From the NCBI GenBank assembly GCA_964247055.1, contig OZ176054.1:7998001-8062000 (forward strand): 64,000 bases of DNA, written 5' to 3'. The position numbers were made by a program, and so were the translations under genes. The number at the start of each line of letters is the position of its first letter. Position 1 is the first letter of the stretch. The notes beneath the pieces are model-generated. The model was not told where the DNA came from and ran no database searches. It saw only the letters and a program-made list of their open reading frames with translations. The DNA comes from Paragordius varius (Eukaryota > Animalia > Nematomorpha). This document shows, piece by piece, positions 4,200 through 48,834 of the stretch.

Positions 4200-6740
4200 T
4201 CAAGAATTGAAATAATGGATACCTTCCAGACCATATGGTTGGAACAATTTAGATTTGGGTTGGTTTATATATTTTTGACTAGGTCGATTACCCCGATAAT
4301 CCCCATTGATAGTTTTATTGGCGAATATTTTATAATCCTTATTGATATTCCCATTGTAGGTAAATGTTAAATTATTTTTCCTATTATATGAATATAATAA
4401 CATAAATACTTATTGTGTTTTATTGAGTTCAATTCTTCATCTGAAGATATTTCATCTTCAGAAAAGTTCGAGTTAAAATTTTCAGGTTTCTTAATCTGTT
4501 TATCAAATAAATCAGATTCCCAAGCACCATATTCATCGTTTGTTATATGATCGGCATCTCCTTCAATAAATGCCAAAAATCTAATTAATAAATAAATATA
4601 TGTATCTTCAATATATTGATATATTAACGGCAAATATAATTTAATATAGGGTAATTATAAATCAAAATTGTATAAAATAAAAAACCTATTATAACTATGC
4701 ATTTTATGATCAAATTTTTTAAAACGGTTAATGGTAAAACATAATATAGATTTTCAATGGCAGTTTTAAAATGATTTTTGCGAAATTGTTATAGAATTGA
4801 AGGAATAACATAAATTTTTAAACTTAGAAAGGGCTCATGTTAAATATCATGTTTTTTTTATAATATAAGATAAATTACTCAATTTGTTAAATTTTAAAAT
4901 GTTGCTAGGCATAACTCCAAGATATCTTTATCAAAAAATGTCTGTTATAATTATGTGTGTACTTCAAAGGTTCTTTAAGTTTTTTTGCAACTTGCCACGG
5001 ACTACGTTGATAATTGGTTGTACAATAATCTCGAAGTTCTTTCAACTGTTTTTCCGTTTCTACCCGTCCTTGATCAATATATTCTTCTTCTGTTAACAAT
5101 TTTATGTGAGGGGGAAACTTTTTTCGGCTAGTAAATAATATGAATAAAATATATCAACCACCACAAAGCTAATGAATCAATATGTAATAAAAATCCAAGT
5201 TCTTAACTCTGGATACTATGAAAAAAAATAACACTATATTATATAATGTATCATCATAATACCCTTAATGCAAAAAATTCGTTTGGAAGAATAAAGCTAT
5301 AATGAAAAATATTTTCATCAAAAAAACGTTATATTATGTATATATATATAAGAGCATACTAAAATAATTTCAACGTTTCACCGCCCTTGTAAAGCGGATT
5401 AAAACGAGATCGCCATCGTGCCAAATTATCTAGGGTTATGAGTAGAAGAGGAATGATTATGCTTGTTTGAGCGTTATTACGAAAAGCATAGGCTAGGCCA
5501 CACAGTGATATTAAACGAATACCCCATTTTATTAGTGTGATAGATTTAATATCTTGAGGCGGTCCGCGCCAATAACAAATGGCAAAACTAATGAAACTAA
5601 CAAGTCCTATGTATGCAGCAACTCCCAACGGGTATGCCGTTATAATTTGACGTATGTTTTGCAAAATATGTTGTAAAAAATAAATTCCAAATGACCAGCC
5701 CCCGGCTAATATAAGGTACGTGGCTGTTTTACGCTATCAAAATAAAAAACTCTAATTTACAAAGAAAACGTTAAAAATGAATAAAAATCAGTTATAAATA
5801 AAATTAAATTAAGTAAAGGATTAATGCACAACTAGGCAATTTTTCTCTCATTATAGCTCAAGTGTTAAATCGTTCGTAAAGTTTGATACATTTTAAGTCC
5901 ATACACTTAAAAAAAGGAAATAAAGAGAGTCAAAACTGTATAATTTTTATATTAAGTTTTAATATAGTTATGCGCGTATAATAGAATATTGATAAGGTTA
6001 AAAAATTTAGTATGCTATAAGTTTAATTTATTTATATTGGTATTGTCGATAAATTCAAAACACTTTTAAGTTGAGGAAAAAAATATTTTGATTTTAATTT
6101 ACTTGTGGTATGAGTCGGCTCAAAATATATATTATAACAAGTATAGATGCAATATTTCCAAAAGATATCCCTGACATGTAGTAAAAACTTTCATTTCTAA
6201 ATTTATATAAGCTTTTACCTGGCTAAATGCGGAGCAAAAATATATAAGAGTATTGATATTAATGCCAGAGCCACTTTATTTTTATTGTAAATTTCAAAAT
6301 TAAATTTTATGGTATATGGATCTTTAGTATATATTCCAACGCAAGATAAATGAAAAGTATCCATAGAAATGGTGTTAAATCTCCATGGAAACAATTTAAA
6401 AAAATTTGATGCTTTATATTGATTGAGAAGGTCAGTTGAACTGTTACCCTTGTATATAACATAAGAGCTAGATTCATTAAAGTCCCATTGAAGCTAAATT
6501 TCAATGAAAAAATACTTTGGGGCAACTCAACAGATATTTAACACGAAAGGGTTTTCCCGTATAACAAAAAATATCTAATTGAGAAACAATCTTTGACAAA
6601 AATGATTGACTCATTCCAGACTTTAACCAATATACTATATTATAATATAGATAATAACCTTTATTTAGATCATTTGTAAAAATTTGATCTATTAAAAAGG
6701 CAACGATAAAAATTTTAAACCACATCATGTTAAAAGGCAT
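4200..6740 (-). CDS. NEMP1: Nuclear envelope integral membrane protein (NEMP1/TMEM194 family), about 480 aa
   Basis: Exons 6740-6659, 6634-6516, 6493-6219, 6196-6103, 5733-5375, 5127-4963, 4580-4410, 4380-4200. Signal peptide, IFCY, FYYMSGISFG, ILAGGWSFGIY, FAICYWRGP, and LLTEEEYIDQGRVETEKQLKELRDYC...SPW...FLAFIEG are NEMP family hallmarks. The 5375 donor and the first intron are less certain. Confidence 0.9.
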
Positions 6741-12209: not shown

Positions 12210-12510
12210 TTTTTAACAATTCAAATTCACCCTTGAATAATTCAAGAACACCCTAAAAAACTGTGTTTTCGGGCTAATATAACCCACCATTGATATGAAA
12301 TATATTTTCACGACATAGTTTATTATTTTTTCAGAATTATATTAAATTTAAACAGAATTTCATTTTTTTAAATTATATAAAATAAAGGTAATTTTTAATC
12401 TTAAAAAAACACACAATTTTTAGGGTGAATATACATTGTTCGAGGGGGAAGTTGAATTGTTCAAGGATGAATTTGAATCGTTCAAGGGTAAATTTGAACT
12501 AGTATATATT
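12210..12510. repeat. Degenerate foldback element with TTGAAn(n)nTTCAA subrepeats
   Basis: CACCCTAAAA near the left end and TTTTAGGGTG near the right end, with inverted ttgaa..ttcaa units related to 25440-26090. Confidence 0.45.
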
Positions 12511-15500: not shown

Positions 15501-17347
15501 CTAACATTATAATAAAACAAGCAAGGATAAAATATAAAAGAAAAATGAAATTGAATTAAATAACAAGTTATTTATGAGTTATACGTTCAAAATTTTTACT
15601 TTTTTTTCATTTTTCCCAAGACGATTTGGTGCTAGTATTTTTTGAATCACAAAATGATTTATCTTACGGCGCTTTCTAAAAAAGTATATTTTTAGTATGT
15701 GGAATTGAAAATCATATATTTAAGATATACCACTTATCCCTAAACATCTAAACTTACAATGTTAGTTAATACGTCGTGAATAAGGTAAAAATAAAAATAA
15801 TTTTATTGAAATTTCAATCAGCAAGAATCGTTTAGAAAATTAAAGTATAACTTTCATTATCAGGTAAGGTCCAGTTTATCGACAAAAGAACTATACCTAT
15901 GATATAACAGATTACACCCATAAGGATTTTAAATTTGTCTTTAATTGTAAATTATTATATATGTAAAAATATTTTAATTCCTCTGACTAACTGTAATTAC
16001 AACACACGTGCCAAACAACTCTATGGAGCAATAATCAATCCCTGTGTTAACTTTCCATGTTCTCATTTACACCGTTCATATTTCAATCAATTATTATGTA
16101 GTATATCATACAATTTTATCTTTACTAAAAACAAACAATATTAGGCATGTATAATAACATAAAAACGGGAGTAGGAATTTGTATAACGTTTTTTACCAAT
16201 ATATATTCTCATGTTTCCTTTTCTGTTTTATATATGTATATCGCAAAATATGTAAAATGGGAACGAAAAGGTGTAAAAAATATTATTATAATAATATACA
16301 AATAGCGTAGGGTATAAAAAAAGTTAGTCCAAAAAATTAAATAAACACAAAATTAATGTAAAAGTATGGGGGTAGAATGTGTTTAATTTCTACTATTTGT
16401 TGTTTTTTACCATACGCTACTGTAAAACAAAAAAATTTAAAGGTGTTTTTGTTGGTAGTTTTTGCTTTTTTTTCTGTAAAATAAACCATGAAGCAAAAAC
16501 CTAATTTCGTTTTGCTATTGCTTTTATAAATATCATATCGATTGAATGTTATACATTGTTACGTATTCATATTAAATAAAAAAATAATTAAATTAATTTT
16601 TTGTTAGTTTTGGGATATATAAATATTGCTTTTGGGGGGTATAAAAAAAAACTTTTTGCATGATAGAATTTGCGACTTTTATCACATAGATAAATGGTAA
16701 ATAGATAGATCTTTGACGAATAATTCATTATAATATAAAACATATTTTTATAATTGCGTAATAAATATTTTTCAAAATTAAAAAAAGAAAAAAAAAGTGT
16801 TTTATAAGTTTTTCTCCCAATGAAAAAAAACGTGCGCATATGGTAATTAATGCATTATAAATTATTATAAAATATATACATTAATCATCATATTTTATCA
16901 TTAAAAAAAATAAAATTTGTATACCTTATTTATATATAAAATTTGTGCGCGACAAATTAAAAATATTTATTGTAAAGATATTCCAAGTTAAAAATACAAT
17001 TTGTGTTTTAACCAACCTACATTTATAACATAACATAACATAACACACAAAAATATTTTTTTACTTTTTATTTTTATACACGGTATATATTTGTTCTGTT
17101 AACCAAATAAAAAATCCAATAAAATATTTTTTTTCTTCATAAAATTAATACTACTATTTCCGCTATATCTTCCTTCGTGTTTTATATACAAATTTGCGCG
17201 ATATAATCTTTTTTGTTTTAATTATACATATCATCATATCTATAAAATTTTTTTTTTCCAAAAGTTTATAATATATCCTCAACAACCCAATCAATAAAAT
17301 TATGAAGAGAAACAACGATTAAACCACAACCCAGGGCTAATAAAATA

Positions 17348-20300
17348 ATGACAAATAAAAATCATGTTGATTCCAGAATCACAGATGACAACCCAACGAG
17401 CCAATGTAATATGAGAAGATCCGTTCCTACCCTTATTATTAAGAGTAGAAAAAGTATTAGTCAAGTGAAAACATCTTTCTTACATTGTGATAATAATATA
17501 GTTAGGAGGTTGAAAACAACAAAGGCCCAAAATTGTGTTGAAACAACCAAAAATTATTATTCCGAAAACATATTAGGATTAAACTATTTCTCACCAACAG
17601 CGTTTGCGGACTCTGATAAAGGCACAATGAAATTCAATGATATAGAAATCCATTCGACTAGTTTGTCAAATAATCATTTTAATCTTCGCACACATACAAA
17701 TTATAATCCGATAAAAAGTTCGAGAAAAACCCACAAATCCACCATCATTACGAAATTTAATCCATACACCGCATTTATCTGCCTATTTTTACTTTCCCTA
17801 TTCACATGCCCTTTAACAGGTTGATTATTATTTTAGTTAGCGTTATATTTCTAGGATTACCAATTATTCAAATCTTATAATATCTAACTTATGATTATGA
17901 TTGAATTTTAATTTATAGCATTTCTCAATCATAAAGAAATTAATTGGAAAGTTTCTTAGCAGTACACGATTATTTTATGTTATCAATATTTATGGATATA
18001 ATGCTTAAGCACCGTTAAAATATTTTGTTTTTAGATTGTTAATATATTTTCTATGATTCTAGCCAAATCTCTTTAATTTTCTATTAAATATTTAATATTC
18101 GGACCTTTAACATGCAAATTGTTTTTAACAACCGCGTCAAGCCGTGTAATTTTTTAAATAGTAACACAGATACGATATAAAATTAATTGATCATAATTTT
18201 TATTTTTTTATTTAATGTGTATATAATTATACCTCATCTGGTTTTGAATAAATTTTGATTTTTTCTTTACTGTTTCTAAGTGACCATATGCATTTTTTTA
18301 TCATCTCATCATTATGGATAATAAAAACATTAAGTTAACTAATAAAAACAGAGGTTCAAGGAGGTTTCTTCTTTTTATCATAGTGATCGCAAAAAATTAT
18401 AATCATAAAATATTTTTATATATTTGTATCATTGATAAGTAGAAAATGATAAACTTAGTTTTAGAGCGATAAGCCAATTCGAGAATTTATTTTTTCTTTG
18501 AATGGTTATGCAAATGACAATTTGGGTTTACGACACGGTTGAGTTTAAAACTGGTTTTTTGCTCTTAAAACATAACACTTTATAGAGATATTATTCAAAT
18601 TTATATGCAAAATCAAATAAATACGATTTTGTCCCTATTCAAATTCATTTACATTTTTCTGATTCATTACCGTTTAATATAGAGTGAACATAGTGATTTA
18701 AAGTAAAATTGTTTAGAATGTAATAATTTTTGGTTATTAGTGGGTCACTTTACAAATGAGATCAGGAGTGTTCATACAAATACCTTCGCGGACCACATTT
18801 TTGACTAAAAAATCTGGCGTGGCATACGGAAAATATATATAAGCATAATAAATATTTTTTACATAAAACTGGTAAAAAAATTTACGACGACAATATTACT
18901 ATATTTATTTCACTAGTTTTTGCTAGTTCGTTGTCAATATTTGGGAAGACTCGTCTGAAATTTGTTTAAGCAATGCCAATTTTACTAAAGTTTTGCATAG
19001 CATGTTTTTTGTAAATTATTGAATATCTTACAGTAGCACATGTCATAAAACAGTATTAGTCCATAAAAGAACAAAAATTTTTTAACAAAACAAGGGGTTA
19101 TTATGGATATGTTATATACAACTAGGTTTGTTTTATTAAAAAAACATGGGCTAATAATGTTTTATGCAATACGCTACTGTATTTGGTAATTTTCAAAAAT
19201 TTTCTGCGATCTCAGTATGGAAAACCCCTAATATAAATGCATGATAAATTAGCGGACCGAGTGTTGAAAACCCCTAATATAAATGCATGATAAATTATTA
19301 TATACGATCCTAAATTTATGTATTTTATCATAGTTTTGAGTCAACAACCCAAACCAGAAGATGATTTACCCATTTCTGTGGAAGCACCACAAGCCGCAGT
19401 TCCAACTAACACTCCGGCTCCCCCACAAGCTAATGCCCCCAATGCGGCCCCAGTTGGGGATGTTTCCGCCCCAATAATATCGGAACCACCGATTAACGTT
19501 AAGCTTGATCAATGTAGCGGTCGGACTGCCACTGTAAAATGGGACCCGCCAGCGAAAACAGATGTCTTGAAATATCTGGTCTTGGGTCACGTTGATGGAA
19601 CACCTGATCATGAACTTGACCGCCTAGGTTTTAAAAAAATTTGATATATTCATAATTGTTCTGCTAGAGATATAATCTGGAGTTTGTCTTTAAAATTTAC
19701 GATGAATTATACTGTTTCATCTTAATCAAACCCATTTATATGAATTATAGCATAGTTAGGGCGATATTTCAAAAAGATTTTTTGTTGTTTTTACGATTAT
19801 TGTTAATTTGATTATTTTTAGGATTGGAATAGAGGCGTTGTTTGCAATATATTTTTATTTTTTTGTATTTTTGACGGGTTATGATGTATGATGATAAACG
19901 AAAAATATTTAATTTGATATTTTACGATCATTGGTATTAATGTATATTGTGTATCGAAAGGTATACAATTCTCATAGAAGAGTTTTTTTATTACAACATT
20001 TCAATGAGCCTAATATTTTTTAAAACTATTACCACATTCTAAGGTTTACAATATAATCAATATTGGTCTTTGATATTTTTTGACAATTTCAATTACTCAT
20101 TATTCTTATTTAGGCGAAGCACCAGGAAGCGAGAATATGTTAAGTGTAGATATAAAACCGGGAGGGAAATATCGCTTTAAAGTGGCCACAGTTAATCGCG
20201 ATGAATACATTAGTGTGCCGAGTGCAGCTACCGAGGTATGCAGTAGTCCTGGGGACGTGCCAGCCCATCACCCGTTAAACGTTGTGGGAAAAGGAACTGA

Positions 20301-23300
20301 TAATAACAACATGGTCATTTCATGGGAAGTATAATTACTAACATTAGCGCTAAAAATTAACCTAATCTCTCTCACTCTCTCTCATATAAATTTTAAATTA
20401 TAAATGTCTAAGTCTAATAGTTTTTTTTGGCTTTTAAGTGCTTAAAAAATAAATGTAAATGGGTTTAGGTATTTAAACGATAGCGCCCTTTTATATTTTT
20501 ACACCGTATGAATACCGGTTTATAATTGGGCCAAACTAATATTATAAATGTGCACAAAAAGGCAAAAGTTAAATATTTTGTAGTAAACTCGACTTTTTTT
20601 AAAATGAATCTAAGTCTTTCATAATAAAATATTTGTTAGTTTTAGGTTTCATGCTTTCAAATCCAATTATGATTCAATAATCTAAATTAGTAAAACAATT
20701 TAACAAATATCCTTCATTTATTTGTATAGCCCCTTACGCACAATGAATTAAACGGTCCCGATTTTCATTACAAAGTTGAATACAAACCGAGAGACGAAAC
20801 AGAATGGAAAAGTGCCGAAGTCCGAAATCCGGAAGAAAATACCTACACTATTAAAGGTTTGATAAAATTTTGATATTGCAATATATAAATATAAACAAAC
20901 ATGCGATAAAAATTAAACATCATTCATATATCGTTAATTTTTGGTTTGATTAGATATTGGAAAATATACACCCTACGATATTAAAGTCAGTGCTTACAAT
21001 AGTTTTGGGCCTGCAAACGGGGAACCATCTCAAGCTGTTGGTTTTTCTGGCGAAGATAGTAATATTTTATAATTACTATTTATTGCTATGCAAAATTTAG
21101 CGAAACTATGATATTTGATTAATAAACGCATATTTATATTTGCTTTAGTTCCTACGGCTAAGGTTGAGAATTTACAATTACAAGAAATTATTGATGGTAA
21201 GCGAGCTCGAATATCTTGGTCCCCGGTTAACCCGAACGAAATGAATGGCCCCTTAGTGGGATACAAAGTAAATTTCATGAAATTACTTAACATTTAGAAA
21301 TTAATGTATGCAATTTTAGTTAAATTCTAACTTATAATAAGTCTAAATTTGAATCTAAATATCTACCGTAAAGACTCAAGAAACATTGCAAAATATCTTT
21401 TTTTGTTTTTAAAGAAGGAAGAATGTAAAATAACCATGCCTTTTCTTGAATCTTCCAATTATTTCGGAAAATTTGTTGATTTTAAAACCGCTTAATTATA
21501 AAAAATTATTTATTTAATGCCAACACAAAAATAAGTACAAGAAAACTAATATTTTCTTATATCGAGCTGCCTTTGCCACATAGTACTTTATTTTATCCAA
21601 TTAGTCTTTTTTCTACAATAGATTCGAAGTTATACTACCTCATACGAAGGAGATAATTTGACGGAAACAATTGTACCTCCCCGTGCCACGAATGCTTTGA
21701 TTGATATTCTTAGACCAAACACTGAGAATGTCGTCAAAATCGCAGCCTACAACAATAAGTTTGATGGGCCTGAAAGTGAAGAGTTGGTTATTAGTACACC
21801 TGAAGCTGGTAATTTTTAATAATAAGCACATAAATTCTCTTTTTTATATTTATTTTTTGGAATCATAGAATAGGTTTAATTTGTATTCAATGATACCTTT
21901 TACTAATTTTTATCGTTTATATGAAATACTTAATCAAAGTATTTACATTTATGTTGGCCAATACACATTTTTGGCCAATTGGCATTACAGTACTCAAATA
22001 ATGTAATAAAGATTGAAAATAATAGAAATGTGCATATATTTTAATTTTATCAAAACTTGTTTATTACATTTAAATTTAACAACAAAATTAAAAATAAATA
22101 CTGCCAATAATTAAAATTATAGATTTCACAATCTCAGATTATATAATTAAAAATTTTAAAAATCTTTTTTATTCTATATAGTTCCAGGAAAACCACAAAA
22201 CTTTAAAGCCATGGCACTTGGCCCCACAAACATTCGATTCTCATGGTCTCAACCCATAGAAAAAAATGGCGTCATCAAGGGATACAGAGTCATGTACGCC
22301 CCAGGTAATTTATATTAAATAGGGTTAGATGAATTTTTAATTTGCCAAAAATATGGTTTTTGGTTTAATTTAAAAATTTTTTAAGTGTAATTATTAAATA
22401 TTCCCTTTTTTTGTAGTGGATCAAGCTGGAAATCCATTGGCACCCGAACAAGAAGCTAGGGTTGAGCCTTTGTCACAAGAAGCTTTTATTTCAAGTGAAT
22501 ATGGATAAATTTATAATTTGTTTGCAAAATTATATTTTTGCGTAAGAAGATGTTTTTTAAAAAAATATTTTATTGATATACAAAGGATTACAACCAGAAT
22601 CAAACTATAAAGCTAATATTCGAGCAGCAACATCAGTTGGATATGGAGAGCCTGCTGAGGCTATGACAAGAACTACTCGACCTGGAGGTATTCGTTTTTA
22701 ATCAAATGTTGAAAAGAATACAAAATTAATAATAATGACCTAAAATATATAAAATTTTTATATTATTGATAATCAATTGAATTAGACATATATCCAATTT
22801 TTAAGAATGTTTCATCCTTTATATTTTATATTTAGCCCCAGATAAACCTGATTTTGATGTATCAGTTGTCGATGGAGGTTTCAATATAACTGTGAAACCA
22901 AGTGCATTCCCTGGGGCCTTTTACCATGTTCTTTACAAAAAAACAGGTAAGATAGGATTTTATCAAATTTTAACTAATAATATAATTCTCCTGGACATAA
23001 TTCTATTAGTACACTTTTTATAGATGGTCTTATTCATGTACTTTCAAACATACCAATCCAAAATTTATAATCGCTTTATATCCATTATCGTTCTATTTTA
23101 AGCCGGGTGCGTTTTATTTAACCAAAAATGTTAAGAATATATCTTATTATAATTAACTTCTCTTACAACAATAATTGTCTTATCTTTACAGGCGAAAATT
23201 GGACCTCGACAAAACTCCAATCCTTTGATCGTTCCAGAATGATTCGAAACGTTAGCGAGAACACGGCCTATCAAATTCGCGTGAAAGCAGTAAATGATGA

Positions 23301-24478
23301 TCAAACATCTATCAGCGCACCACAAACTGTTATGGTACCGTTGGAAAGTTTGAATTTTATTATTGTATCAGCTAAGGAATTTCTAAGACTTTTATTTGAG
23401 TTTACAGCTTCCAAACAATTCTATAGTATTTACCTAATTCCATCTAACCCTTATCAAATTTTTTTTCTATTAGGAGCCCCTAACACTCCATTTAATGTGA
23501 ATGTCGATCGATGCGATGCTAAAGAATCAAAAATATCTTGGGATGTTAAACCAGTTGATCATTCTCCCATTACAAACTTTAAGATTGAACACCAAGAAGA
23601 AGGAAATGAAGATTGGAAAGAGTTGGAAGGTTTTTTAACATATTTATTTTTAATTTAAAATTTATGTTGGAGTCTGCAATTATTGATCTAAATTCTATAA
23701 ATTTTGACATATAATTGTATAACAAGCATGCGTCGTTTAATTTAGCATTTTCACTTTACAAAACTTTTATCCAATTATTTTAGGTGTTCCATTCATTTTG
23801 GGTGTTTTCAGTGCTATATTGCTTGCTCTAAACTAAAATTTACAATTAAATAATAACAGTATGAATAAGAATATACAGCTAGTTTTTCATTAATTATTGC
23901 AAGATATGGCATCTAATGCAGAGGGCTGTATTATTGGATTGCATTTATTTTTTCCCACTTTTACCTATTATTAGCCAATAATAATTCTCTTTAAAGTTTA
24001 TGCTATCCAGCATATTTAATGAAAAGCTAGCAATAATTAAAACAAAAAACAAAAGTGTCATTTATACATGTGCTTCTAAGTTTAATCTCCCCCCATAATT
24101 TAAGGTAATCATGCATCGGATTCGGAAGAATTCGTTATAACTGACCTACCTCCTGGTCGTCACCGATTCCGTATTTTAGCGGTCAATAAGAATGGTGTAA
24201 GTAGCCCGAGTGAACCAACACCCATATGTGATATTAGTACGGGTCTGACTGGGGCAGGAACTCCTAAGGGTGGTGTCGAAGGCGCGGGGGGTGAAGGACA
24301 AGCCGATGGAACAGCTAAAACTGGAACAGATGCTGCCAAACCGACTCAAATAATTAAGGGGAAATCTGGAGCTGTTAGTAGTATGCTACTATCATCTTCT
24401 TACGGGAAATATACGGTTATAATCTCCACAATAGGATTAATATGTTTTGGTAGATTGATTGGTGGTCCGTTACATTAA
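17348..24478 (+). CDS. Neuroglian/L1CAM-related protein of six FN3 domains, no Ig domains, C-terminal GPI-like signal (about 872 aa)
   Basis: 14 phase-consistent exons: 17348-17819, 19334-19627, 20114-20328, 20730-20856, 20954-21058, 21149-21267, 21622-21808, 22182-22304, 22417-22494, 22586-22687, 22836-22946, 23192-23347, 23474-23629, 24105-24478 (TAA). L1-family signatures: CSSPGDVPAHHPLNVVGKGTDNNNMVISWEP, NGPDFHY, GFSGEDIP, STPEAVPGKP. Confidence 0.85.
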
Positions 24479-25439: not shown

Positions 25440-26090
25440 ATATACCATTTGCACTTCAAGAGTATCCTTGAACATTTCAAGTTGCTTGAACAGTTCAAGT
25501 TCCTTGAACAATTCAAGTTTGTCCTTGAACATTTCAAGTTGGTTTTTAAAATTTTTAAATTTTGATTTAATCATAATTTTTGCATGTATTTATTTTATTA
25601 TTTTTTAATCTAATTTTTTTTGTTTATTATATATTTAATCATTTCAAAATTAAAATTTCTATTCAAAAATCACTTTTTTATTTCAAACTAATTTTTTTCC
25701 AATTTAATACAATTATTAACTTTTAGTGTTTTCAATGAAAATTTTAAATAATAACCCAGAAAACTTATATATTTTTTAATTAGGTTTTATAATTATATTA
25801 ATATCCAAAAAAATTTAAAGAAATTAATAAAGTTATACGGTTTCTCAATGATTAAAAGTTGATATTGTTTTATAATTTATGTTAAATAATAAAAAATAGG
25901 TTAAAAACGATAAAGATATACGATTTAATTGATAAATGTTAAAACAAAACAAAAAAGTCAAAGGACCAACTTGAATTGTTCAAGGACAAACTTGAACTGT
26001 TCAAAGACCTGAACTGTTCAAAGACCAACTTGAACTGTTCAAGGACCAACTTGAATGTTCAAGGAAACTCTTGAAGTGCAAATGATATAT
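25440..26090. mobile_element. Foldback MITE with inverted subterminal tandem arrays
   Basis: TIR ATATACCATTTGCACTTCAAGAG / CTCTTGAAGTGCAAATGATATAT, followed on each side by 4-5 tandem units of about 20 bp with the palindromic core TTGAAC-N-GTTCAA. Confidence 0.8.
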
Positions 26091-39704: not shown

Positions 39705-42700
39705 TCACTTTTTAAGTATGTTCAGCAATACGGCATCATCGTCATCGGGGTATTGGAATTCAGTTTTAAAATCAAGTCCACCACCACTGTTTGCTTTAGT
39801 TCCCGACATATCTACAAAATAAAAATATTTATCATTGTTTGTTAAATTTTGGGGTCCCGTTTGTACCTTTTTATGCTGCATCGGTTAGAATAAATTATAA
39901 GCCTTCTAAATTTTTTGACAGTTTGGGATTCAATATAATACAATCATGCCGAAAACCAAACATTTAATTATCAGTATTTTGCCTATAGTTTTTATCATAA
40001 GAGAAAACGCCTAAAATCTTACCATATATTTGTATGATATTAAAATAAAATAACCCAATAGTTGATATCTAAAAAGTACAACCGAAATGCTGAAAATCCA
40101 GCGTTTAACCCAACCCAGTTTTTTTTTACATTTCCCCCTGCCCATTAATGTTTTTTTTGGAATTCCGAACCGTCCTCACCCTAATTAAATGTGTTCCGCC
40201 CCCTTAAACCTGACACACTATTAAGTATCCAAAATTCCCATATACTAATGTTTGGCCCATTGTTAATATCAGGGCTATGTTTTGAAGCCATGGCTAATTT
40301 CTGTAACAATTCTTGACCGGCAATAGGTGGTTCATAAGGAGCATCTTCAGTATCAAAAGGAGCGCCAAACAAATCATTACCCGTTGTTAGGCCCCTATTC
40401 TTGTCCATACAATCAAATTTTATTTGTTGTTCTTGAATTTCTGGTGATAGCGCCTATGCCACATAAATTGGATTTATATTTCAGTAAATGAAATTATACA
40501 GACAAAATGTAAAGATTAAAAGACAAATATTTTTTTTGAAAAAAAACCCATACTTTTTCAAACCTTGTTGTTTTTCTATATATATGGTATGAATTATATA
40601 AATAGTATATTATCAATTTATTTCTGTCACCCCCATTGAGCCAAAAAGTATGAGTTATTATTTAATAAATCCAAATTTTAAAATAGGATTATTTCAAAAA
40701 ATATTTGTCTTTTTATTTTTACATTTCGTATGTATAATTTCAACTGTAAAAATGGATTTTTCGGGATAGTTTTCAAATCCAGGGCTACATCAAATTTAAA
40801 TATTTTAAAAATACCAGAAACAAATTAAATATAGATTCCTATGGCCTTTTCCTTATTAATTATATTATAATGTATTAGTGTGAAAATCCCCATTTCACAT
40901 GTCCAAATCTTCGTTAAATCTTTAAAATAGCAATTAGAAAATTGATGATTTTAATCAAAATTTTGCTTTTGTTTCATTTAAATTTCAGAGCCATACAAAT
41001 TTTGGATTCAAAAGTTGACGAATTGTGGCAAAAATAATTTTTATGGTAATATAAATTAAAATAACTAGTCATGAAAACACCCAATATAATTGATTTTAAA
41101 CTATTTGAATAATGAAGTGTTAAGTTTTTCCACTAATCAAATATTAGTTTATTATAATATAATGTAATGTTATTATAAACGTTATCTATTTGCAATATGT
41201 AAAAATGTCAACCACGTAACAACGATATAAGGAAATAAAAACAAATTTAATACCTGATAATTTATAATAATCAAACATTTTTCATTTCTAAAAATAAATC
41301 AAACCTGATCCATGACCGATATAAATGGTTTCTCCGAATCCGTTAAGGGGGGAGGACCTTTTAATCGTTTAACTGGTCCCTGCATTTCACCCATACCAGG
41401 CTCCATGGCTTAAAATAAATAAAGTACATATATTTTTTCCAAATATTGTCCATTTAAATACATCTTTTTAATATATACCTTTATTATTAGAGTTTGGACC
41501 ACGTTTAAATTTACGGGCCTCATCTGCTTTGCGTTTAGCCTCAGCAGCTTGTTCAGCATAAATTTTTCGTTTTACAGATATTACAGCTAAAAAATTTGAC
41601 AAAAAAATGTATAGATGGATATATATAAGATAGTTTAATCAACCATTAGTTTAATTCCCAAATATTAGGTTTAAAATATTATTGTGTTTTTTTTATGTGT
41701 AATTTTTTTCAAAATTTAAAATAGTTTTATCGACCAAATCTATATATTTTTATTATTATCGCCCATTTGTGTTTGATACACAAGTTTAAATGTAAAATAT
41801 TTACATGTATAAATTGACTGTAATTAGTTAAACTATACCTGATATTTTCCGATATGAGAGATAAAACAACACACAAAATACCAAAAATGATATCACAAAC
41901 ACAACAATAAATTTGGTAAAGGATTCTTTTGTAACTAAAGTAAAAAAATTATGAAATAAAATTATTTTATAACTTTTTAATTTTTGAAAGAATATAAACA
42001 AAATATATAATTTAATAATTGCCTTACTGAAATATTGGGCAAAAGGTCCTAAGGCAGGATCTATATGTTTCAAATAAATAAATATCGTTTAAGATTAATC
42101 TTTAAATAAAAATAATGAATTATTATATTTGTCCCTTTTTTTCTTTTATATAGATGGAATTTAGATAAATTAAAAACTTATAACATAAATATTCAATAAT
42201 ATAAAAATGCCCTTACAATAAATAACAGAGTCAAAAAATCATTATTGGGATATAAAACCATCATATAAAATACCATTTACATATACTTTAATTGATTTAC
42301 AAAAATATGATTATAAAATATTTTTTTAACAAACCTGGGATTATCAATTGAACCGGGTTTGGAAAATATTGACCTAACTCATTCATTCCTATGCACAAAA
42401 AGTAACCGTTATAATTGATGGTCAAATTATCCAGTAATAAGTAATTGCGTTCATAGAATGTCAAATTATTTTCCATTGTTTTGGTTGTTGTAATCTGAGG
42501 CGTCCATGCATCATTTTGATTTATATCATGATAGGTTATGTACTTTATATTAGACGTTACATCTATGTCTTGATTGTGTACACCTAAAAATATTTATTGA
42601 TAAAGTTATTATTATTGGTGTAAAAAATGTTAATGTTTAAATTATTTTAACCTGGTTGAATATTAATGGGACGTTTAGAATATATCCAACGTATAACAGG

Positions 42701-45700
42701 TAACGGGTATCCATTAAATTGACACGTAAGATTTAATGAAGTCTCAGTTTTTAGAGTGATTTGACCTTCGGCTGATAAATGTTGAAGGCTTACAGGAGCT
42801 ACGTATAAAAGCATTTTTTTTTCAAATTTTACTAAAAAAATTTATTTGTTTGTGTAAATTTTTTTACCCAATATATTGGGTATAGTGGCATCGACTAGCG
42901 TTTCATTTTCAAAGGTGTAAACACTTTTGCAGACAATGGAGGTACCAATATATCTTGCTGGATTTTCCATACTTATTAAACTTTGAATCTTTTCTCCCAG
43001 GGTTTTATTTATATGGCCCTCGGTTTCACGCATCGCACCAGTTTTATCTTTATATAGCCTAAATAAAATATATTTTAAAAGTTTTCGTTCCACAATGCGT
43101 CAAAAAGGGCGAAAAAAATGCAAAACTTTAAGATCTTATTAGATAGAAGAGTTACATAAAACTCATACACTTAACTTATAATATGGGATAGTCAAGTAAA
43201 TAATAAAATTTATTTTTTTCATATTATACCGAAAATATGTTGACTAATATTATATAAAAACTCATTTTTGGGGTAAAATGAGCTTACTTGAGTAATTTTA
43301 GTTTGCGATAATATCAACTTTGAATTTCCCAGAAAGTTATATGCTATGTGGGAAATTATAGAAATAATTTTTATTTTTTTTGAAATATACTGAAAATAAA
43401 AACTTATTTCGTGTCTTTCTGAATTATGTGGACAGTAAGTTATAAAATTAGGCATTTGTGATTTCAAACTATAAAATAAAGGAAATTTCAAAATTTAATA
43501 TAGTCCTTTTTTACGCGAATAATTCCATTTAAAATTTTGAAATATTATATTACAAGTTTTTTGCCCTTTTGGATCTAAAAAAATACAGTCGTTAAAAGCA
43601 TTAATAAACACACTTAAAGGTTGATTATCACCAATAGCGTGTTAAATTATAGATTAAAAAATTGTCCATTTTATAGTATTTTACATGATATGTAAATATT
43701 TTTTATATTATAAATTAGATATTATTTTACATCTAAAACGAATACATTTTAGTTTTAAAAAAAATCTAAGCATGATAAGTTTTAGCCCATTCATGTATGA
43801 CTTGTTCCACAAAAACTTTTAAAAAATAATTATAAATTTTAACTGTCAAAATATCCTATAAAAACATTATTTCAAAAAATATTTATAATTTAACCACAGA
43901 ATTTTTGGACGCATATATCCTTCTTTTAGCTCACAACCAAAAGATATTGGTTTGTTATACAAGTTATGTTCTATATGCCGTTGAGTAATGTAAAGATTGG
44001 GAAAAGATGGTTTTTCTAAAATAATACAATATAAAAATATAAATCAATAGATATAACCTATTATATACAGTAATAATATCAAAAAGATCATCATCATAAT
44101 TATAAATTTTAATTTAAAAAATGCTAAAAAAATTAATTATAATATATATGTTGGGCAATACATAACGTATTATGTTGTCAAATTATAAACATTTTTTGTA
44201 ATATAACAACTTGAAATAATGATTTTAATTAAGCATAAAAAAGTTCTTATATTGTCAAATTTTTAACATATGCCTAACATTTTTTGTAATGTAATTATTT
44301 GAAATTATGATTTTAAGGTTGATTAGAAATCTTATACAAAAAACTATTTCACACGGCTAATTTAATTAGATTAAAACTTAGGGGCAAAAACTAGATATCA
44401 TGGATATAGAGCAAAGAAAAAAAAGGAAACATACTATAGACAGCAAATTTTAGGGTGTGGGAACCCATGATTGATGCCTTTTTCCCACAAACATTTTCGT
44501 AGATGCGTTTTCTATCAATGATTTGAAGCATTAATTCACTACTATTCATGTTTAATTGGGGTGAAAAGATGGTAAAAATAAGTTGTTTAGGATCAGTATC
44601 CGTTAGTCTAGCCCCATAAGTTGAATCTTGAAACGTTTGTTCAGCATATTTTACGCCATTTATGAACCATATAGAGGAGTAATCATCCGTGGTATAATTT
44701 TGTAAAATGTTATAGGTTATTTGTGATGCATGGTCTTGCAACATATCTCGAACGCTTGGTGGTTTTGTCATTAGAATAGTTCCTAAAAAGTTTCATGTAA
44801 TTAATACGAATTTGGGAATGAATTAATAAAGTAAGTTTTTGTCCCTAATAATTTGTAATTATTAACATAAAGGGGGGTAGGAATACGGATAATGATTGAT
44901 ATTATGGTTAAATATATAGTCTAATATATCTATTTCAACTAGCAAACATATTGTTATTTAATTCGGCCCTTATAAAAATATTATAAAATAAATTTAACTC
45001 TATCATCTTAGTAAAAGTATTTAACTACTTATTAAAAAATAATAAGTAAATACTAATAAAAAAGCGGATTAATTAAAAGTCATGTTTATAGATAATAATA
45101 TGCTAGCACAACCAACCTTATTCAAGATAAATTATAGGGCTCGAAAGAATAAAAGGTATGAATGCAAATATTATAGTAAGACTAATGTACAAATTGGTTA
45201 AAAGATTATGTATCTTTTGATAGATTTAGGGTCACAAAAAAATTCAACACATCTCGAAAATAATCAAAAATAGTTAAGAGTGAAACTCATTAGTTTATAT
45301 GCTTGGTACCAATATCTATTTTAAAAAGCATAAAATTGCAAAATCAAATATAAAGGAGGTTTTAAATTAGAAAAATCAGAAATTACAGTGGATATTAGTC
45401 TTAGGTTCATATTTTTTGTAAATATAAATCATCTCATATAGCACTGCATGAGTGAACAATTAATTGATATTATATCTTATAATTATGACAATTTACCTTA
45501 AACCAAAACTTTACTCATTAAATAAATCTGAGCAATGCATCTATTGTACATATAAATGATTAAATCTTAGTGGTTTTATTTAGAATTTTAGATACTACTA
45601 CCGCTATAGATTCTGTAACGAATTATATAATTCAATTTATTAAAGGTAAACCGTTTTTTCCTTTTTCTGCTTGGCAGAGTATATAATTGAAGCTTTTAAC

Positions 45701-47563
45701 TTTAAAAGCTCAGACCAAGATATATTATCAAAGAAAATCCTAGCGCTTTCAGTTATACTTCCAATCTGATACATGTGAAACTTATACATCACCAGTACAT
45801 GTTCTACTTAAAAATACGCTCCAGGGTCGTAGAAACAGAAGTATCAATATATAAATCAGTAACTTAATTTTTGGAATAAAAAGTAACCAAAAATGTTGTT
45901 CTTTTTCCCGAAATTAGTAATCTAACAACATTGTTAGCAATATGTTCAACGAAATTTGCCGAAAATTTAAAATAGGAATATATATAGCTCTTGCACTCAT
46001 TATAAGTTGTCTACTTTATAAAGAAAAATATCGAGTCATAATAATTTTTATTGAATTGTTACTAAATGCATATTGAGTTTCAATGCAATATTTTTTAATA
46101 TTTGATTTTTAACGTGTTAAAAACTCCCAATATCATAAAAATGCATCATATTTAAATCTTAAAAGGCTTTTAACACTGTTAACTTGATGAAATATATATA
46201 ATAGATAATGTATTAGGATTATGGTGCCTTTGGTTTTGACCGTTACGAGTAATTTACACTTTTGTGGTGAGTGCTCCATATAAGAAAATGATAAAATTTG
46301 CGTACATATCTTTAAATTAAATTTTTTTGGCCAAAGCTAATGCTTCATTCCAAAAATTATCACCTAAAAATACTATAACCTACATTTAAAAAGCAAAACA
46401 ATATTTTCAAAATATTATAATTTTTAGATGTGGACTCCGAAAGTCCCGAATTAATTCGCTCTTGTCAAATGGGTCCCCCTAAAATAAACGCAAATATGCC
46501 TGGATTGGGCGATAAAAATTTTATATGCTAAATTTTATAAACTTAAAATAACTTTTTTCAAAAAATTATTTTAAGCCAAATTTTGTTGAACCGTTTTTCA
46601 TACTATTTTGAGGCATGATGGAAACGGTATATAAACGTTCTATATAATTCGATCATGCTAAACATTTCCATCACATCAGAATTTTCATAAAAATATTCAT
46701 TCGTCTTCAAACTTAATATAAATTTTGTTTTTTTACAAAACTCACCAATAAATGCAAACAAAGTTTTAAAAATGCAATAATTATGTTCAGCATCATCGAA
46801 TTATATAGAAGAAGAGTTTTCATAATATCTTAAAGCGTTTTAAACCGTATACGTCTCCAATAGTATGAAGTACGCTTTAAAAAAAATTTGTTAAAAATCA
46901 AATTTTTGAAAAATGTATTTAATAAAAATTTTTTTATTATATTGAAAATAGCCCATTTAAGAAGAGCGAAAAAATTTGGAATGAGGCCACATTAAAAAAT
47001 TAAAATATTTTAAAAATATTTTTGCTTATATGGAGTTAATATTTTTAGTGATATTTTTTGGAAAAATTTAGCTAAAAAAATATTTAAAAAATATGCGCAA
47101 ATTTTTCCATTTTCCGATATGGATCACCACAAAAGTGTAAACTTTCTTAATTCACGTAACAACCAAAACCAAAGGCACTATGATGATCCTGGTACATTTT
47201 AGTATCAGATTTTATATATTTCAAATTATTGTTTTATACCCCCCCCCCCCCCCCCCCCCGGAATTAGGATGCAGTGTAATAGGGTGAGGTACTGTATTGA
47301 TATAAATCATTATCTTATACATATATATTATATGATGCATATATAATAAATAAAAATTAAAACCACAATCTGATTCATCAGATTGATCAGTTTGGCCTTC
47401 ATTGCAACAGTCAACGATATCGTCGCATTTTTTAGCTATTTCGATACATATTTTTGAGAATTTGCACATAAATCCATCACAAGACACATTTGGAAGCGCT
47501 TGTAAATTATTAAAAAAACCTTAATATTATCCAAATCTTACATAGAAATAAAATCACTAACAT
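39705..47563 (-). CDS. Type I membrane protein: signal peptide, LDLa, three Ig-like domains, TM, long cytoplasmic tail
   Basis: Exons 47563-47542, 47498-47364 (CDGFMC..CI..CDDIVDCC..DQSDESDC), 44782-44435, 44015-43895, 43058-42868 (GCELKEGYMRPKILW...IVCKS), 42798-42652, 42583-42335 (LTCQFNGYPLPVIRW...NGYFLCIGMNELG), 42060-42028, 41934-41839 (TM FIVVFVISFLVFCVLFYLSY), 41586-41479, 41408-41305, 40453-about 40245, then uncertain exons ending 39812-39705. Phases check through exon 12. Confidence 0.8.
40482..40747. mobile_element. Family H Tigger/pogo-like MITE (intronic)
   Basis: Inverted repeats of about 60-70 bp, CAGT..GAAATTATACAGACAAAATGTAAA / TTTACATTTCGTATGTATAATTTCAACTG-TA. Same family as 61577-61865. 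Confidence 0.6.
46190..47220. mobile_element. Family C long-TIR element, best-preserved copy (intron 2 of the LDLa-Ig gene)
   Basis: tgtattaggattatggtgcctttggttttg..tttacacttttgtggtga mirrors tcaccacaaaagtgtaaa..caaaaccaaaggcactatgatgatcctggtaca. Imperfect inverted similarity extends about 300 bp inward. Confidence 0.75.
47239..47259. repeat. C21 homopolymer (G21 on the transcribed strand)
   Basis: 21 consecutive C counted in the sequence. Confidence 0.95.
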
Positions 47564-47648: not shown

Positions 47649-48834
47649 ATGAAACCCATTAGAGTAAATTATTATTTTATCATTTAGATAATTATTGTAT
47701 GCTCGATTTTGGCCATTATCATATCATTGATATATTTTCTATACCAAAGTTCTACAGAAATGGAATCATCACCAAAAGATTTACCAACAAAAGTTTTGAT
47801 TTATTTAACATTAGCATCATAAGGAATATTTTACATTGCGACATTTAGATGTATTCAAGTACAACATTCCACCATATAAATACGATAATAAATCTTCCGT
47901 ATTTAAAACAATGGAATTAAATATAGCTGATAACTGCAAAATTAATGCATTATATCACTTGAACAACAATTCGGAAAACGATGTGCCAGTTTTAATATTT
48001 TTGCATGGTCGTTCCTTTTCTTCTAAAATATGGTTAGAAACAGGCATATTACCAACTTTTTCAAACTTGGGCTTTGATATTTTTGCCCTTGATCTCCCAG
48101 GTTTTGGGATGTCTAAATGTTTACCCAAAGACTACCCATTTAGCAATAGGTTAAAAGAGGCATTAACCCGTAATTATAAAAACGAAACTTCACCATCATC
48201 CCTATACAATAGCAAATCATATGCAGAAATTAAAAATGCCATTTTATTGGATCAAATTGTTAAAACGATTGGTCTTAACTATGGTCACACAAAAAAGTTT
48301 GTTTTAATCAGTCCATCTATGAGTGGAAGTTATAGTATACCATATCTCATGTACTATACGGATATTAATTTTTCCCATGAAATATTTGATGATAATGATA
48401 ATAATGAACATACTTACAAACCAAAAAATGACAAACGGTTTTACGCTTCAACGGATGTAGAAGCAAATTCCATGGAGATGATTGGTTACGCTCCTATTGC
48501 TCCAACCAATTTTGATTCCTTTGATTTCAATGATTATAAACGTTTACGAATACCAACCCTAATCACTTACGGCGAGTCAGATGTGAGATTAGGGATGGAA
48601 TCATTACGGTTTTTAGAACAAATCCCCACAAGCGTTATAGTGCCTATCCCCAATGCTGGACACGCTTGTTACATTGACCAAACGGGTATTTGGTCTCAAG
48701 TGTTTTATAACTTTCTTTTGGCAATCGTACCTAGCCATCTTTCTAGCATTATTATTGGAAACAATTCTCACTCTTCATCTCAATCAATTAGCGAGCCTAC
48801 AATTCCAATCAAAGGTTCGGTTGTTCGAACATAA
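47649..48834 (+). CDS. ABHD14: Alpha/beta hydrolase ABHD14 family with N-terminal membrane anchor (ABHD14A-like)
   Basis: Exons 47649-47663, 47688-47792, 47824-48834 (introns 24 and 31 nt, both removing in-frame stops). IFLHGRSFSSKIW, DLPGFGMS, nucleophile LISPSMSG, YGESD and NAGHACYID give the Ser/Asp/His triad. TM IIIVCSILAIIISLIYFLY. Two Asn/Asp/Ser-rich insertions. Confidence 0.9.

What the first reader, a model, noticed from the sequence alone, without database searches (positions are those of the whole stretch)
17348..24478. Ig-less neuroglian/L1 derivative with a recycled first FN3 domain and a GPI-type tail
Known: L1-family proteins have 6 Ig, up to 5 FN3, a TM and an ankyrin-binding FIGQY tail; contactins have 6 Ig, 4 FN3 and GPI. 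Seen: the signal sequence is followed directly by a Pro/Ala linker and the five L1-type FN3 domains, then a sixth FN3 that again looks like FN3-1 (paired Cys: DQCSGRTATVKW..EVCSS versus DRCDAKESKISW..PICDIS), a Gly-rich stalk and a hydrophobic end (YTVIISTIGLICFG). No Ig exons, TM-plus-tail or FIGQY were found. Inference: a rearranged adhesion or surface-coat molecule, for example a decoy or host-interface protein. I do not know this architecture from described L1 members.
Basis: partly seen in the sequence, partly recalled or inferred. Interest (0 to 1): 0.75.

Follow-up and report, generated by a model that had tools for sequence, protein, structure and literature searches.

The report
Ig-less L1/neuroglian paralogue, six FN3
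This AT-rich worm genome carries, beside a normal L1/neuroglian adhesion gene, a second intact copy that has lost all antibody-like domains and the cell-interior tail, gained an extra copy of its first fibronectin domain and ends in a lipid-anchor-type tail; a horsehair worm has the same gene, so it is a real, conserved but undescribed variant.

Summary
A 14-exon, all GT-AG, frame-consistent gene (17348-24478, + strand) encodes about 872 aa. In order these are: a basic N-terminal extension, one hydrophobic segment, a Pro/Ala linker, six FN3 domains, a Gly-rich stalk and a short hydrophobic C-terminus.

- **L1 cassette:** FN3-1 to FN3-5 are position-for-position the L1/neuroglian cassette.
- **Sixth domain:** FN3-6 is an FN3-1-type domain. 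It scores 59 bits on the position-1 profile, sits inside the FN3-1 clade (97/98), has the same 80-residue Cys spacing, and has an internal intron at an equivalent place and phase.
- **Missing parts:** no Ig, transmembrane or FIGQY exon lies nearby. The flanks hold unrelated genes.
- **Canonical gene:** a separate L1 gene with Ig exons, FN3 exons and a Bravo_FIGEY tail sits on another contig (C1).
- **Orthologue:** Gordionus 'neuroglian-like' (761 aa, auto-annotated only) is 55% identical and colinear, and its exon boundaries fall at the same aligned places as all 13 introns. The gene is therefore functional, and the animal is probably a nematomorph.

GPI anchoring is plausible but rests only on a rule-of-thumb test. 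The proposed function is inference. No earlier scan note covers this gene. Verdict: a new variant of a known kind, of moderate interest.

The parts
17348..17819 (+). Exon 1: first ATG, basic low-complexity N-terminal extension (about 141 aa), then the hydrophobic segment; donor in phase 1
   Evidence: The frame is open for 172 codons (17306-17821) while the other two frames are closed. Donor at 17819|GT. The Gordionus orthologue also has a long first exon (103 aa) ending at the same aligned place.
17771..17815 (+). Hydrophobic segment (residues 142-156): signal-anchor or h-region of a very long signal peptide
   Evidence: Highest hydropathy in the protein (mean KD 2.37). Net charge +3 in the 15 residues before it. 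Small residues at -1 and -3 before the conserved start of the mature part, in both species.
19334..19627 (+). Exon 2: Pro/Ala-rich linker (19342-19482) and first half of FN3-1 with its first Cys
   Evidence: The phase-1 acceptor matches the exon 1 donor. Pfam fn3 partial match. The linker is absent from the Gordionus orthologue.
20114..20328 (+). Exon 3: second half of FN3-1 (second Cys) and start of FN3-2
   Evidence: PDB 1CFB Drosophila neuroglian E=5.8e-11. 57% identical to Gordionus P0002.
20730..20856 (+). Exon 4: FN3-2, middle part
   Evidence: Pfam fn3 / FN3_DSCAM partial matches. Splice phases fit.
20954..21058 (+). Exon 5: end of FN3-2
   Evidence: tblastn match to the canonical C1 gene's FN3-2 exon. 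Splice model.
21149..21267 (+). Exon 6: first half of FN3-3
   Evidence: Pfam fn3. 36% identical to the C1 FN3-3 exon.
21622..21808 (+). Exon 7: second half of FN3-3
   Evidence: Pfam fn3 26.8 bits. 41% identical to the C1 counterpart.
22182..22304 (+). Exon 8: first part of FN3-4
   Evidence: Pfam fn3 32.3 bits. 39-41% identical to the C1 counterpart.
22417..22494 (+). Exon 9: middle of FN3-4
   Evidence: Splice phases fit. Colinear with Gordionus.
22586..22687 (+). Exon 10: end of FN3-4
   Evidence: Pfam fn3 partial match. Splice model.
22836..22946 (+). Exon 11: first half of FN3-5 (L1-type fifth domain)
   Evidence: Aligns with the fifth domain of canonical L1 proteins. Positional profile 5 is the best hit, at 31 bits.
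23192..23347 (+). Exon 12: second half of FN3-5
   Evidence: Pfam fn3. tblastn match to the C1 FN3-5 exon.
23474..23629 (+). Exon 13: first half of FN3-6 (first Cys of the second pair)
   Evidence: Best tblastn partner is the FN3-1 first-half exon of the canonical C1 gene and of arthropod neuroglians. 78% identical to Gordionus.
24105..24478 (+). Exon 14: second half of FN3-6 (to 24238), Gly-rich stalk (24239-24391), candidate omega triplet (24392-24400), hydrophobic end (24410-24451), stop (24476-24478)
   Evidence: FN3-6 scores 58.9 bits on the FN3 position-1 profile and lies in the FN3-1 clade.

Best explanation
This is an intact paralogue of the L1/neuroglian cell-adhesion gene, conserved in at least two lineages. 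It kept the five-domain FN3 cassette. It lost all six Ig domains, the transmembrane helix and the ankyrin-binding FIGQY tail. It gained a sixth FN3 domain by duplication of the two FN3-1 exons, and it ends in a Gly-rich stalk plus a short C-terminal hydrophobic peptide of the GPI-attachment type. An internal hydrophobic segment, preceded by a basic, probably disordered extension, should take the chain into the ER with the FN3 array outside the cell. A conserved small-residue site just after that segment may be cut by signal peptidase.

Shown here: the gene model, the domain identities, the absence of Ig/TM/FIGQY exons, the separate canonical gene, and the orthologue with introns at the same aligned places.

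Inferred: the mature protein is a lipid-anchored rod of six FN3 domains on the cell surface. It cannot perform Ig-horseshoe homophilic adhesion or couple to ankyrin. It would therefore act through FN3-mediated cis or heterophilic contacts, for example by modulating clusters of the canonical L1 protein or its co-receptors, or as a spacer or coat molecule. FN3-3 and FN3-6 are the most conserved domains and are the best candidates for binding surfaces.
For: - Gene model: 14 exons, GT-AG introns, matching phases, one stop.
- FN3 identity per exon.
- Neuroglian structure hit, E=5.8e-11.
- Colinear 475-residue match to canonical neuroglians, E about 1e-83.
- Positional profiles: domains 1-5 score best on the diagonal. 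Domain 6 scores 58.9 bits here and 56.9 bits in Gordionus on position 1, and 17 bits or less on the other positions.
- Domain tree: the FN3-6 pair lies inside the FN3-1 clade at 97/98.
- Equal 80-residue Cys spacing, and no other ectodomain Cys.
- The internal introns of FN3-1 and FN3-6 lie within one alignment column of each other, both in phase 1, unlike the internal introns of the other four domains.
- Orthologue P0002 (XP_065324976.1, Gordionus): 55% identity over 745 aligned residues, the same domain order and the same kind of ends. Its tblastn exon blocks break at the aligned places of all 13 introns. Pfam finds no classical Ig domain (I-set, Ig_3, V-set) on it. AlphaFold gives six beta-sandwich domains, and both ends have low confidence.
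- No Ig or TM/FIGQY exons at either locus, with positive controls on C1.
- Unrelated neighbours: NEMP on the minus strand at 5362-5733, and a TBC-like gene further upstream.
- Canonical L1 gene on C1 with a Bravo_FIGEY match of 31.7 bits.
- The tail fits omega-site, spacer and hydrophobic-end rules in both species, giving propeptides of 27 and 29 residues.
- GAA1 and PIG-T genes and one peptidase C13 gene (PIG-K or legumain) are present.
Against: - There are no RNA data for this animal, so exon 1 and the 3' end are supported only by splice logic and by the Gordionus model.
- The hydrophobic entry segment lies 85-141 residues from the N-terminus, which is unusual for a cleaved signal peptide. 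If it is not cleaved, the protein would be type II anchored as well.
- The GPI call rests on hand rules only. The C-terminal hydrophobic run is followed by an Arg and 5-8 more residues, which would also fit a very short membrane anchor.
- FN3-6 has lower model confidence (pLDDT 43-82), because only two sequences cover it.
- The sister relation to the canonical C1 gene is weak (80/57), so the age of the duplication is open.
- Nothing tested here bears on function.
Confidence: 0.8

Rival explanations
1. The gene is an ordinary L1/neuroglian gene whose Ig exons and TM/FIGQY exons were simply missed. They could lie far away, be used as alternative first or last exons, or be too diverged to detect.
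For: No RNA data are available. Introns in this genome can be several kb, and intron 1 is 1.5 kb here and about 12 kb in Gordionus. NCAM and Fasciclin II are known to make GPI and TM isoforms from alternative 3' exons (own knowledge).
Against: - Seven canonical L1 N-termini and six C-termini give no plus-strand hit within -40 kb to +64 kb, or in the Gordionus locus including its first intron. The same queries hit the C1 gene at 1e-12 and 2e-6.
- The genome-wide I-set scan lists no hit within 500 kb on C5.
- The only Bravo_FIGEY match in the genome is on C1.
- An unrelated minus-strand NEMP gene and a TBC-like gene lie upstream.
- Exon 2 begins with a mature-end-like sequence right after a hydrophobic segment, and this junction is conserved in Gordionus.
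- The Gordionus protein carries both a submitter accession (CAK9290101.1) and RefSeq accessions with the identical 761-aa Ig-less sequence.
Confidence: 0.05
2. The architecture is the same, but the protein is not GPI-anchored. The C-terminal hydrophobic stretch would be a short peptide membrane anchor with a stub of 5-8 residues. Alternatively the N-terminal segment stays uncleaved as a type II anchor, or the protein is secreted.
For: - An Arg plus 5-8 residues follow the hydrophobic run in both species.
- The entry segment is internal and preceded by positive charge, like a signal-anchor.
- No validated GPI predictor was run.
Against: - The hydrophobic runs are only 14 and 16 residues, short for a membrane-spanning helix.
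- A small-residue triplet lies 27-29 residues from the end in both species, with a polar spacer, which is typical of GPI signals.
- GAA1 and PIG-T genes and one peptidase C13 gene (PIG-K or legumain) are present.
Confidence: 0.25
3. The gene was acquired from an arthropod host by horizontal transfer of a neuroglian fragment, rather than by duplication within the worm lineage.
For: Over 475 residues it is about as similar to tick and horseshoe-crab neuroglians (32-34%) as to the animal's own canonical gene (30-41% per exon). Horsehair worms are arthropod parasites.
Against: - In the FN3-1 to FN3-5 tree the arthropod sequences form a clade (94/96) that excludes the Ig-less pair. That pair sits, weakly, with the animal's own canonical gene.
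- The gene is AT-rich like its surroundings and has 13 introns.
- It is shared by two lineages that are only 55% identical.
Confidence: 0.03

Closest known systems
Gordionus sp. m RMFG-2023 'neuroglian-like' (XP_065324976.1 / CAK9290101.1, 761 aa; P0002)
   Same: This is the orthologue. It is 55% identical and colinear, and its exon boundaries fall at the aligned places of all 13 introns. It has six FN3 domains, no Ig domain, both Cys pairs with 80-residue spacing, a long N-terminal extension before the hydrophobic segment, and a short hydrophobic C-terminus.
   Different: It lacks the Pro/Ala linker and has a shorter N-terminal extension (84 against 141 residues). It is known only as an automatic annotation. 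No paper describing it was found.
L1 family: Drosophila neuroglian, vertebrate L1CAM, NrCAM, neurofascin and CHL1; also this animal's own canonical gene on C1
   Same: The FN3-1 to FN3-5 cassette shows position-by-position orthology, including the FN3-1 Cys pair and the L1-type fifth domain.
   Different: There are no Ig1-6 domains, so no horseshoe-mediated homophilic binding. There is no transmembrane helix and no FIGQY or ankyrin-binding tail. There is an extra sixth FN3 of FN3-1 type. The end is of the lipid-anchor type.
Contactins (6 Ig, 4 FN3, GPI)
   Same: They have related FN3 domains (PDB contactin FN1-FN3 hits: E 1e-3 to 1e-2 by sequence, TM about 0.55 by fold) and a GPI-type attachment without a cytoplasmic tail.
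   Different: Contactins have six Ig domains and four FN3 domains. Here there are none and six. Sequence similarity is clearly higher to neuroglian than to contactins.
GPI-linked isoforms of Ig-superfamily adhesion molecules (NCAM-120, Fasciclin II GPI form)
   Same: An adhesion-molecule ectodomain is tethered by lipid instead of a signalling tail (own knowledge, not tested here).
   Different: Those are splice isoforms that keep their Ig domains. This is a separate gene without any Ig domain.

Membership tests
L1/neuroglian family | Six N-terminal Ig (I-set/C2) domains | tested here: not met
   No I-set hit on C5 within 500 kb. No tblastn hit with C1 Ig exons or seven canonical N-termini, with a positive control on C1. 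Pfam finds no classical Ig family on orthologue P0002; its only Ig-named hits are below cut-off and lie on FN3 regions.
L1/neuroglian family | L1-type FN3 cassette (FN3-1 to FN3-5 in order) | tested here: met
   Colinear alignment at E about 1e-83. Diagonal of positional profiles. Positional clades in the domain tree.
L1/neuroglian family | Single-pass transmembrane helix after the last FN3 | tested here: not met
   Only a 14-residue hydrophobic run, 8 residues from the stop codon. No TM-exon match downstream.
L1/neuroglian family | Cytoplasmic ankyrin-binding FIGQY region (Pfam Bravo_FIGEY) | tested here: not met
   The only genomic match is on C1:12775421-12775612. No C-terminal match at this locus or in Gordionus.
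Contactin family | Six Ig plus four FN3 domains | tested here: not met
   No Ig domain and six FN3 domains.
GPI-anchored surface proteins | C-terminal signal: small omega triplet, polar spacer, hydrophobic end, no cytoplasmic domain | tested here: inconclusive
   Hand rules are met in both species, with propeptides of 27 and 29 residues. No validated predictor or experiment was available.
GPI-anchored surface proteins | N-terminal ER signal | tested here: inconclusive
   A hydrophobic segment with a conserved small-residue site after it is present, but it lies 85-141 residues from the N-terminus. Gordionus has no nearer Met.
GPI-anchored surface proteins | GPI transamidase present in the genome | tested here: met
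   GAA1 at 91.5 bits, PIG-T at 61.9 bits, and peptidase C13 (PIG-K or legumain) at 52.5 bits.

The most novel reading that the evidence does not exclude
Horsehair worms evolved a lineage-specific surface molecule from their L1 gene. It would be a lipid-anchored rod of six FN3 domains with a duplicated FN3-1 next to the membrane, and a long N-terminal pre-sequence that might itself be released as a second product. It would be used either to tune or block L1-type adhesion in cis, or at the parasite-host interface, where its FN3 cassette resembles the arthropod host's own neuroglian.
Probability: 0.15. Interest if true: 0.7.

Novelty: new variant of a known kind. Interest (0 to 1): 0.45.

Why it matters
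L1-family proteins are defined by the pairing of an Ig horseshoe for adhesion with an ankyrin-binding tail. Here a natural gene has kept only the FN3 cassette for a long evolutionary time, since the two copies are 55% identical. That isolates whatever the FN3 part does on its own, such as cis clustering, co-receptor binding or spacing. The gene also gives a clean example of exon-pair duplication, with FN3-1 re-used as FN3-6. It lies in a phylum of host-manipulating parasites whose surface proteins are almost unknown. It is also a warning for annotation, because the public orthologue is labelled simply 'neuroglian-like'.

Tried and rejected
- **Other apparently Ig-less hits from the representative search.** P0012, P0010, P0025, P0045, P0044 and others are fragments or internal exons of canonical L1 genes. 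P0012 is one open exon on a metagenome scaffold that still includes the last strand of Ig6.
- **Word searches.** Searches with the whole Gordionus protein and with its FN3-6-plus-tail region found no further orthologue. This says little, because other nematomorph proteomes may not be in the collection.
- **Foldseek.** The AlphaFold model against the PDB gave only generic FN3 arrays and could not discriminate families.
- **Flank synteny with Gordionus.** Comparison of 10 kb on each side gave nothing. The look-up of the Gordionus ABHD14A-like gene failed.
- **Micro-introns.** The 22-27 nt micro-introns reported elsewhere in this genome were not needed anywhere in the model.
- I redid the step with numeric coordinates only.
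- **Joined model.** The joined 872-aa model has no reference. It was never sent to a database, family or fold tool. All such searches were made exon by exon by reference or with the Gordionus protein id. The joined-model search and fold were left out, and the joined model was used only inside local scripts built from window.fa.
- **dN/dS.** This was not attempted, because synonymous sites are saturated at 55% protein identity.
Full report
**Setting.** The window is G000:C5:7998001-8062000, from a 110.6 Mb animal genome. Its GC content is about 26%. The closest public relatives of two genes in the window are both from the horsehair worm Gordionus. These are the gene studied here (55% identity) and an ABHD14A-like hydrolase (39% identity). 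The Gordionus genome has 26.9% GC (paper 10.1101/2023.06.26.546503). The animal is therefore probably a nematomorph. This is inference and no name was given. Earlier scan notes hold nothing on this gene or family.

**The gene.** Stop-to-stop frames on the + strand between 17.3 and 24.5 kb show thirteen coding stretches, one of them holding two exons, that are richer in GC than their surroundings. Choosing GT donors and AG acceptors that keep the frame gives one solution with 14 exons. The intron phases are 1,1,0,1,1,0,1,1,1,1,1,1,1 and the intron lengths are 90-1514 bases. The result is a 2619-base ORF with a single terminal stop. No micro-intron was needed. Pfam fn3 matches the exon translations one by one.

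The encoded parts, in order, are:
- a basic low-complexity extension (residues 1-141);
- a 15-residue hydrophobic segment;
- a Pro/Ala linker;
- six FN3 domains (208-793);
- a Gly-rich stalk;
- a Ser triplet, a short polar spacer, a 14-residue hydrophobic run and eight more residues.

**L1 origin of domains 1-5.**
- Exon 3, which spans the FN3-1/FN3-2 junction, hits the Drosophila neuroglian crystal structure 1CFB at E=5.8e-11. Contactins follow at 1e-3 or worse.
- A search of 1.84 billion representative proteins with that exon returned mostly L1-family sequences (neuroglians, L1, neurofascin), along with some sidekick and multi-FN3 proteins. One stood out: P0002, with 57% identity, 761 residues, and the match at residues 180-242 rather than around 680-750 as in full-length L1 proteins.
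- Locally, the FN3-1 to FN3-5 region aligns colinearly over about 475 residues with canonical neuroglians at 32-34% identity, E about 1e-83. The alignment includes the characteristic fifth domain.
- I built profiles for each FN3 position from canonical L1 proteins only. They score the window's domains 1-5, and those of Gordionus, highest on their own position: 43-111 bits on the diagonal (31 for FN3-5) and mostly under 35 elsewhere.
- In a tree of 59 single domains, positions 2, 3, 4 and 5 each form one clade with support 98/96, 96/88, 99/96 and 82/94.

**The sixth domain is an FN3-1 copy.**
- FN3-6 scores 58.9 bits (56.9 in Gordionus) on the position-1 profile and 17 or less on the others. 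That is higher than the gene's own first domain, which scores 42.9 and 45.4.
- In the domain tree the FN3-6 pair lies inside the FN3-1 clade (97/98). The order within that clade is unresolved.
- The ectodomain has only four cysteines, at 218/298 and 710/790, 80 residues apart in both domains. The Gordionus protein has the same spacing.
- The internal introns of FN3-1 and FN3-6 fall within one alignment column of each other, and both are in phase 1. The other four domains have differently placed internal introns.
- This points to duplication of the two FN3-1 exons, not convergence.

**What is missing, and where it is.**
- A genome scan with Pfam Bravo_FIGEY finds one match, on C1:12775421-12775612 (31.7 bits). 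Around it lies a canonical L1 gene with Ig exons, FN3 exons, a TM-like exon and a FIGQY motif split by an intron.
- The FN3 exons of that gene match the window's exons pairwise at 30-41% identity. Its FN3-1 first-half exon also matches the window's FN3-6 first half.
- The Ig exons of C1, the first 620 residues of seven canonical L1 proteins and the last 170 residues of six give no plus-strand hit from 40 kb upstream of the window to its end. The same queries hit C1 at 1e-12 and 2e-6.
- The genome-wide I-set scan has no hit on C5 within 500 kb.
- Upstream of the gene lie a minus-strand NEMP gene (5362-5733; Pfam 84 bits) and, further up, a TBC-like gene with a LINE in an intron, then transketolase. 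There is therefore no room for hidden Ig exons of this gene.

**The orthologue.**
- P0002 is XP_065324976.1 / CAK9290101.1, 'neuroglian-like', from Gordionus sp. m RMFG-2023. The submitter record and RefSeq hold the identical sequence.
- It aligns with the spliced model at 55% identity over 745 residues, from the first residues after the hydrophobic segment to the second Cys of FN3-6. The tblastn exon blocks of P0002 on its locus break at the aligned places of all 13 introns.
- Pfam finds fn3 and related FN3 families on it, with no classical Ig family. The two Ig-named hits are below cut-off and lie on FN3 regions.
- Its locus, including the long first intron and 10 kb of upstream flank, has no Ig or FIGQY exon.
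- Identity per domain is 62.5, 58.4, 71.6, 60.4, 50.6 and 71.1%, so FN3-3 and FN3-6 are the most constrained.
- AlphaFold2 on P0002, with a 25-row alignment, gives six beta-sandwich domains. pLDDT is 85-97 for domains 1-5 and 43-82 for domain 6, which has almost no alignment depth. Residues 1-120 and 712-761 have low confidence.
- Foldseek against the PDB returns only generic FN3 arrays.

**Age and source.** In a tree of the FN3-1 to FN3-5 region the two Ig-less proteins pair at 100/100. They sit weakly (80/57) with the animal's own canonical gene, outside an arthropod clade supported at 94/96. This fits a duplication in the worm lineage or earlier and argues against capture from an arthropod host. 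The date remains open.

**The two ends.**
Exon 1's frame is open for 172 codons while the other two frames are closed. The hydrophobic segment is 141 residues from the first ATG and 47 from the nearest one. In Gordionus it is 84 residues from the only Met. Both extensions are basic, poorly conserved and of low confidence in the model. Positive charge before the segment predicts that the FN3 array faces outward. Small residues at -1 and -3 before the conserved start of the mature part suggest signal-peptidase cleavage. This is inference. If there is no cleavage, the protein is also type II anchored.
- *C-terminus.* Both species show a small-residue triplet 27-29 residues from the end, a polar spacer and a hydrophobic run of 14-16 residues with no cytoplasmic domain. 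The genome encodes GAA1 and PIG-T and has one peptidase C13 gene, which may be PIG-K or legumain. This fits a GPI signal, but no validated predictor or experiment was available. I put GPI anchoring at roughly 0.6 and keep a short peptide anchor as the rival.

**Function (inferred).** Without Ig1-4 the protein cannot make the horseshoe contacts that give L1 proteins their homophilic adhesion. Without FIGQY it cannot recruit ankyrin. What remains is the FN3 rod. In L1-family proteins that rod is implicated in cis clustering and co-receptor contacts (own knowledge). The most likely role is a lipid-tethered cis partner or competitor of the canonical L1 complex, or a spacer or coat molecule. A parasite-host interface role is possible but untested.

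**Known or new.** Full-text searches found no paper on an Ig-less L1 member or on neuroglian in horsehair worms. The only public trace is the automatic 'neuroglian-like' label. I class the gene as a new variant of a known kind.

**Method note.** The spliced 872-residue model has no reference. It was used only inside local scripts built from window.fa. All database, family and fold searches used single exons by reference or the Gordionus protein id, and the joined-model search and fold were left out.

Noticed in passing
G000:C1:12755900-12776500 (loci L003-L006): This is the animal's canonical L1/neuroglian gene. Its FN3-1 appears to carry an insertion of about 35 residues before the second Cys, and its internal FN3-1 intron sits about 15 residues earlier than in the Ig-less gene. 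My exon borders there are approximate.
   Followed up: partly
G000:C4:11816600-11831800: More than 50 near-identical I-set matches occur in tandem with a period of about 298/596 bases, each inside an open frame of 199 aa. This could be an array of alternative Ig exons or a giant repeat protein.
   Followed up: no
window 5362-5733 (-): An exon of a NEMP-family nuclear envelope membrane protein gene (Pfam 84 bits). It bounds the 5' side of the FN3 gene.
   Followed up: partly
window 47815-48831 (+): A single open frame of 339 aa encoding an ABHD14A-like alpha/beta hydrolase. Its best public hit is again Gordionus (39% identity, E=5.5e-56), encoded on a contig of the same length as the Gordionus neuroglian-like gene's.
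   Followed up: partly
window 54570-55455 (+), and 8449-6107 bases before the window start: Reverse-transcriptase ORFs of LINE-type elements. The window copy is broken into three frames. The upstream copy is a 781-aa open frame inside an intron of a TBC-like gene.
   Followed up: no
window 12422-12498, 25455-25541, 25961-26065: Minisatellites with 18-21 base units built around a TTGAAC..GTTCAA palindrome flank the gene. Similar arrays occur in introns of the C1 L1 gene and 34 kb upstream.
   Followed up: no
window 42340-42840 (-) and 47224-47520 (-): Canonical L1 Ig queries give weak Ig-like matches on the minus strand (E 0.003-0.16). There is also a Cys-rich, LDL-receptor-class-A-like open frame. 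These probably belong to other surface-protein genes and are not part of the + strand FN3 gene.
   Followed up: no
window 19342-19482 (+): The Pro/Ala-rich linker of about 47 residues after the hydrophobic segment is absent from the Gordionus orthologue, so it is a recent lineage-specific insertion.
   Followed up: partly
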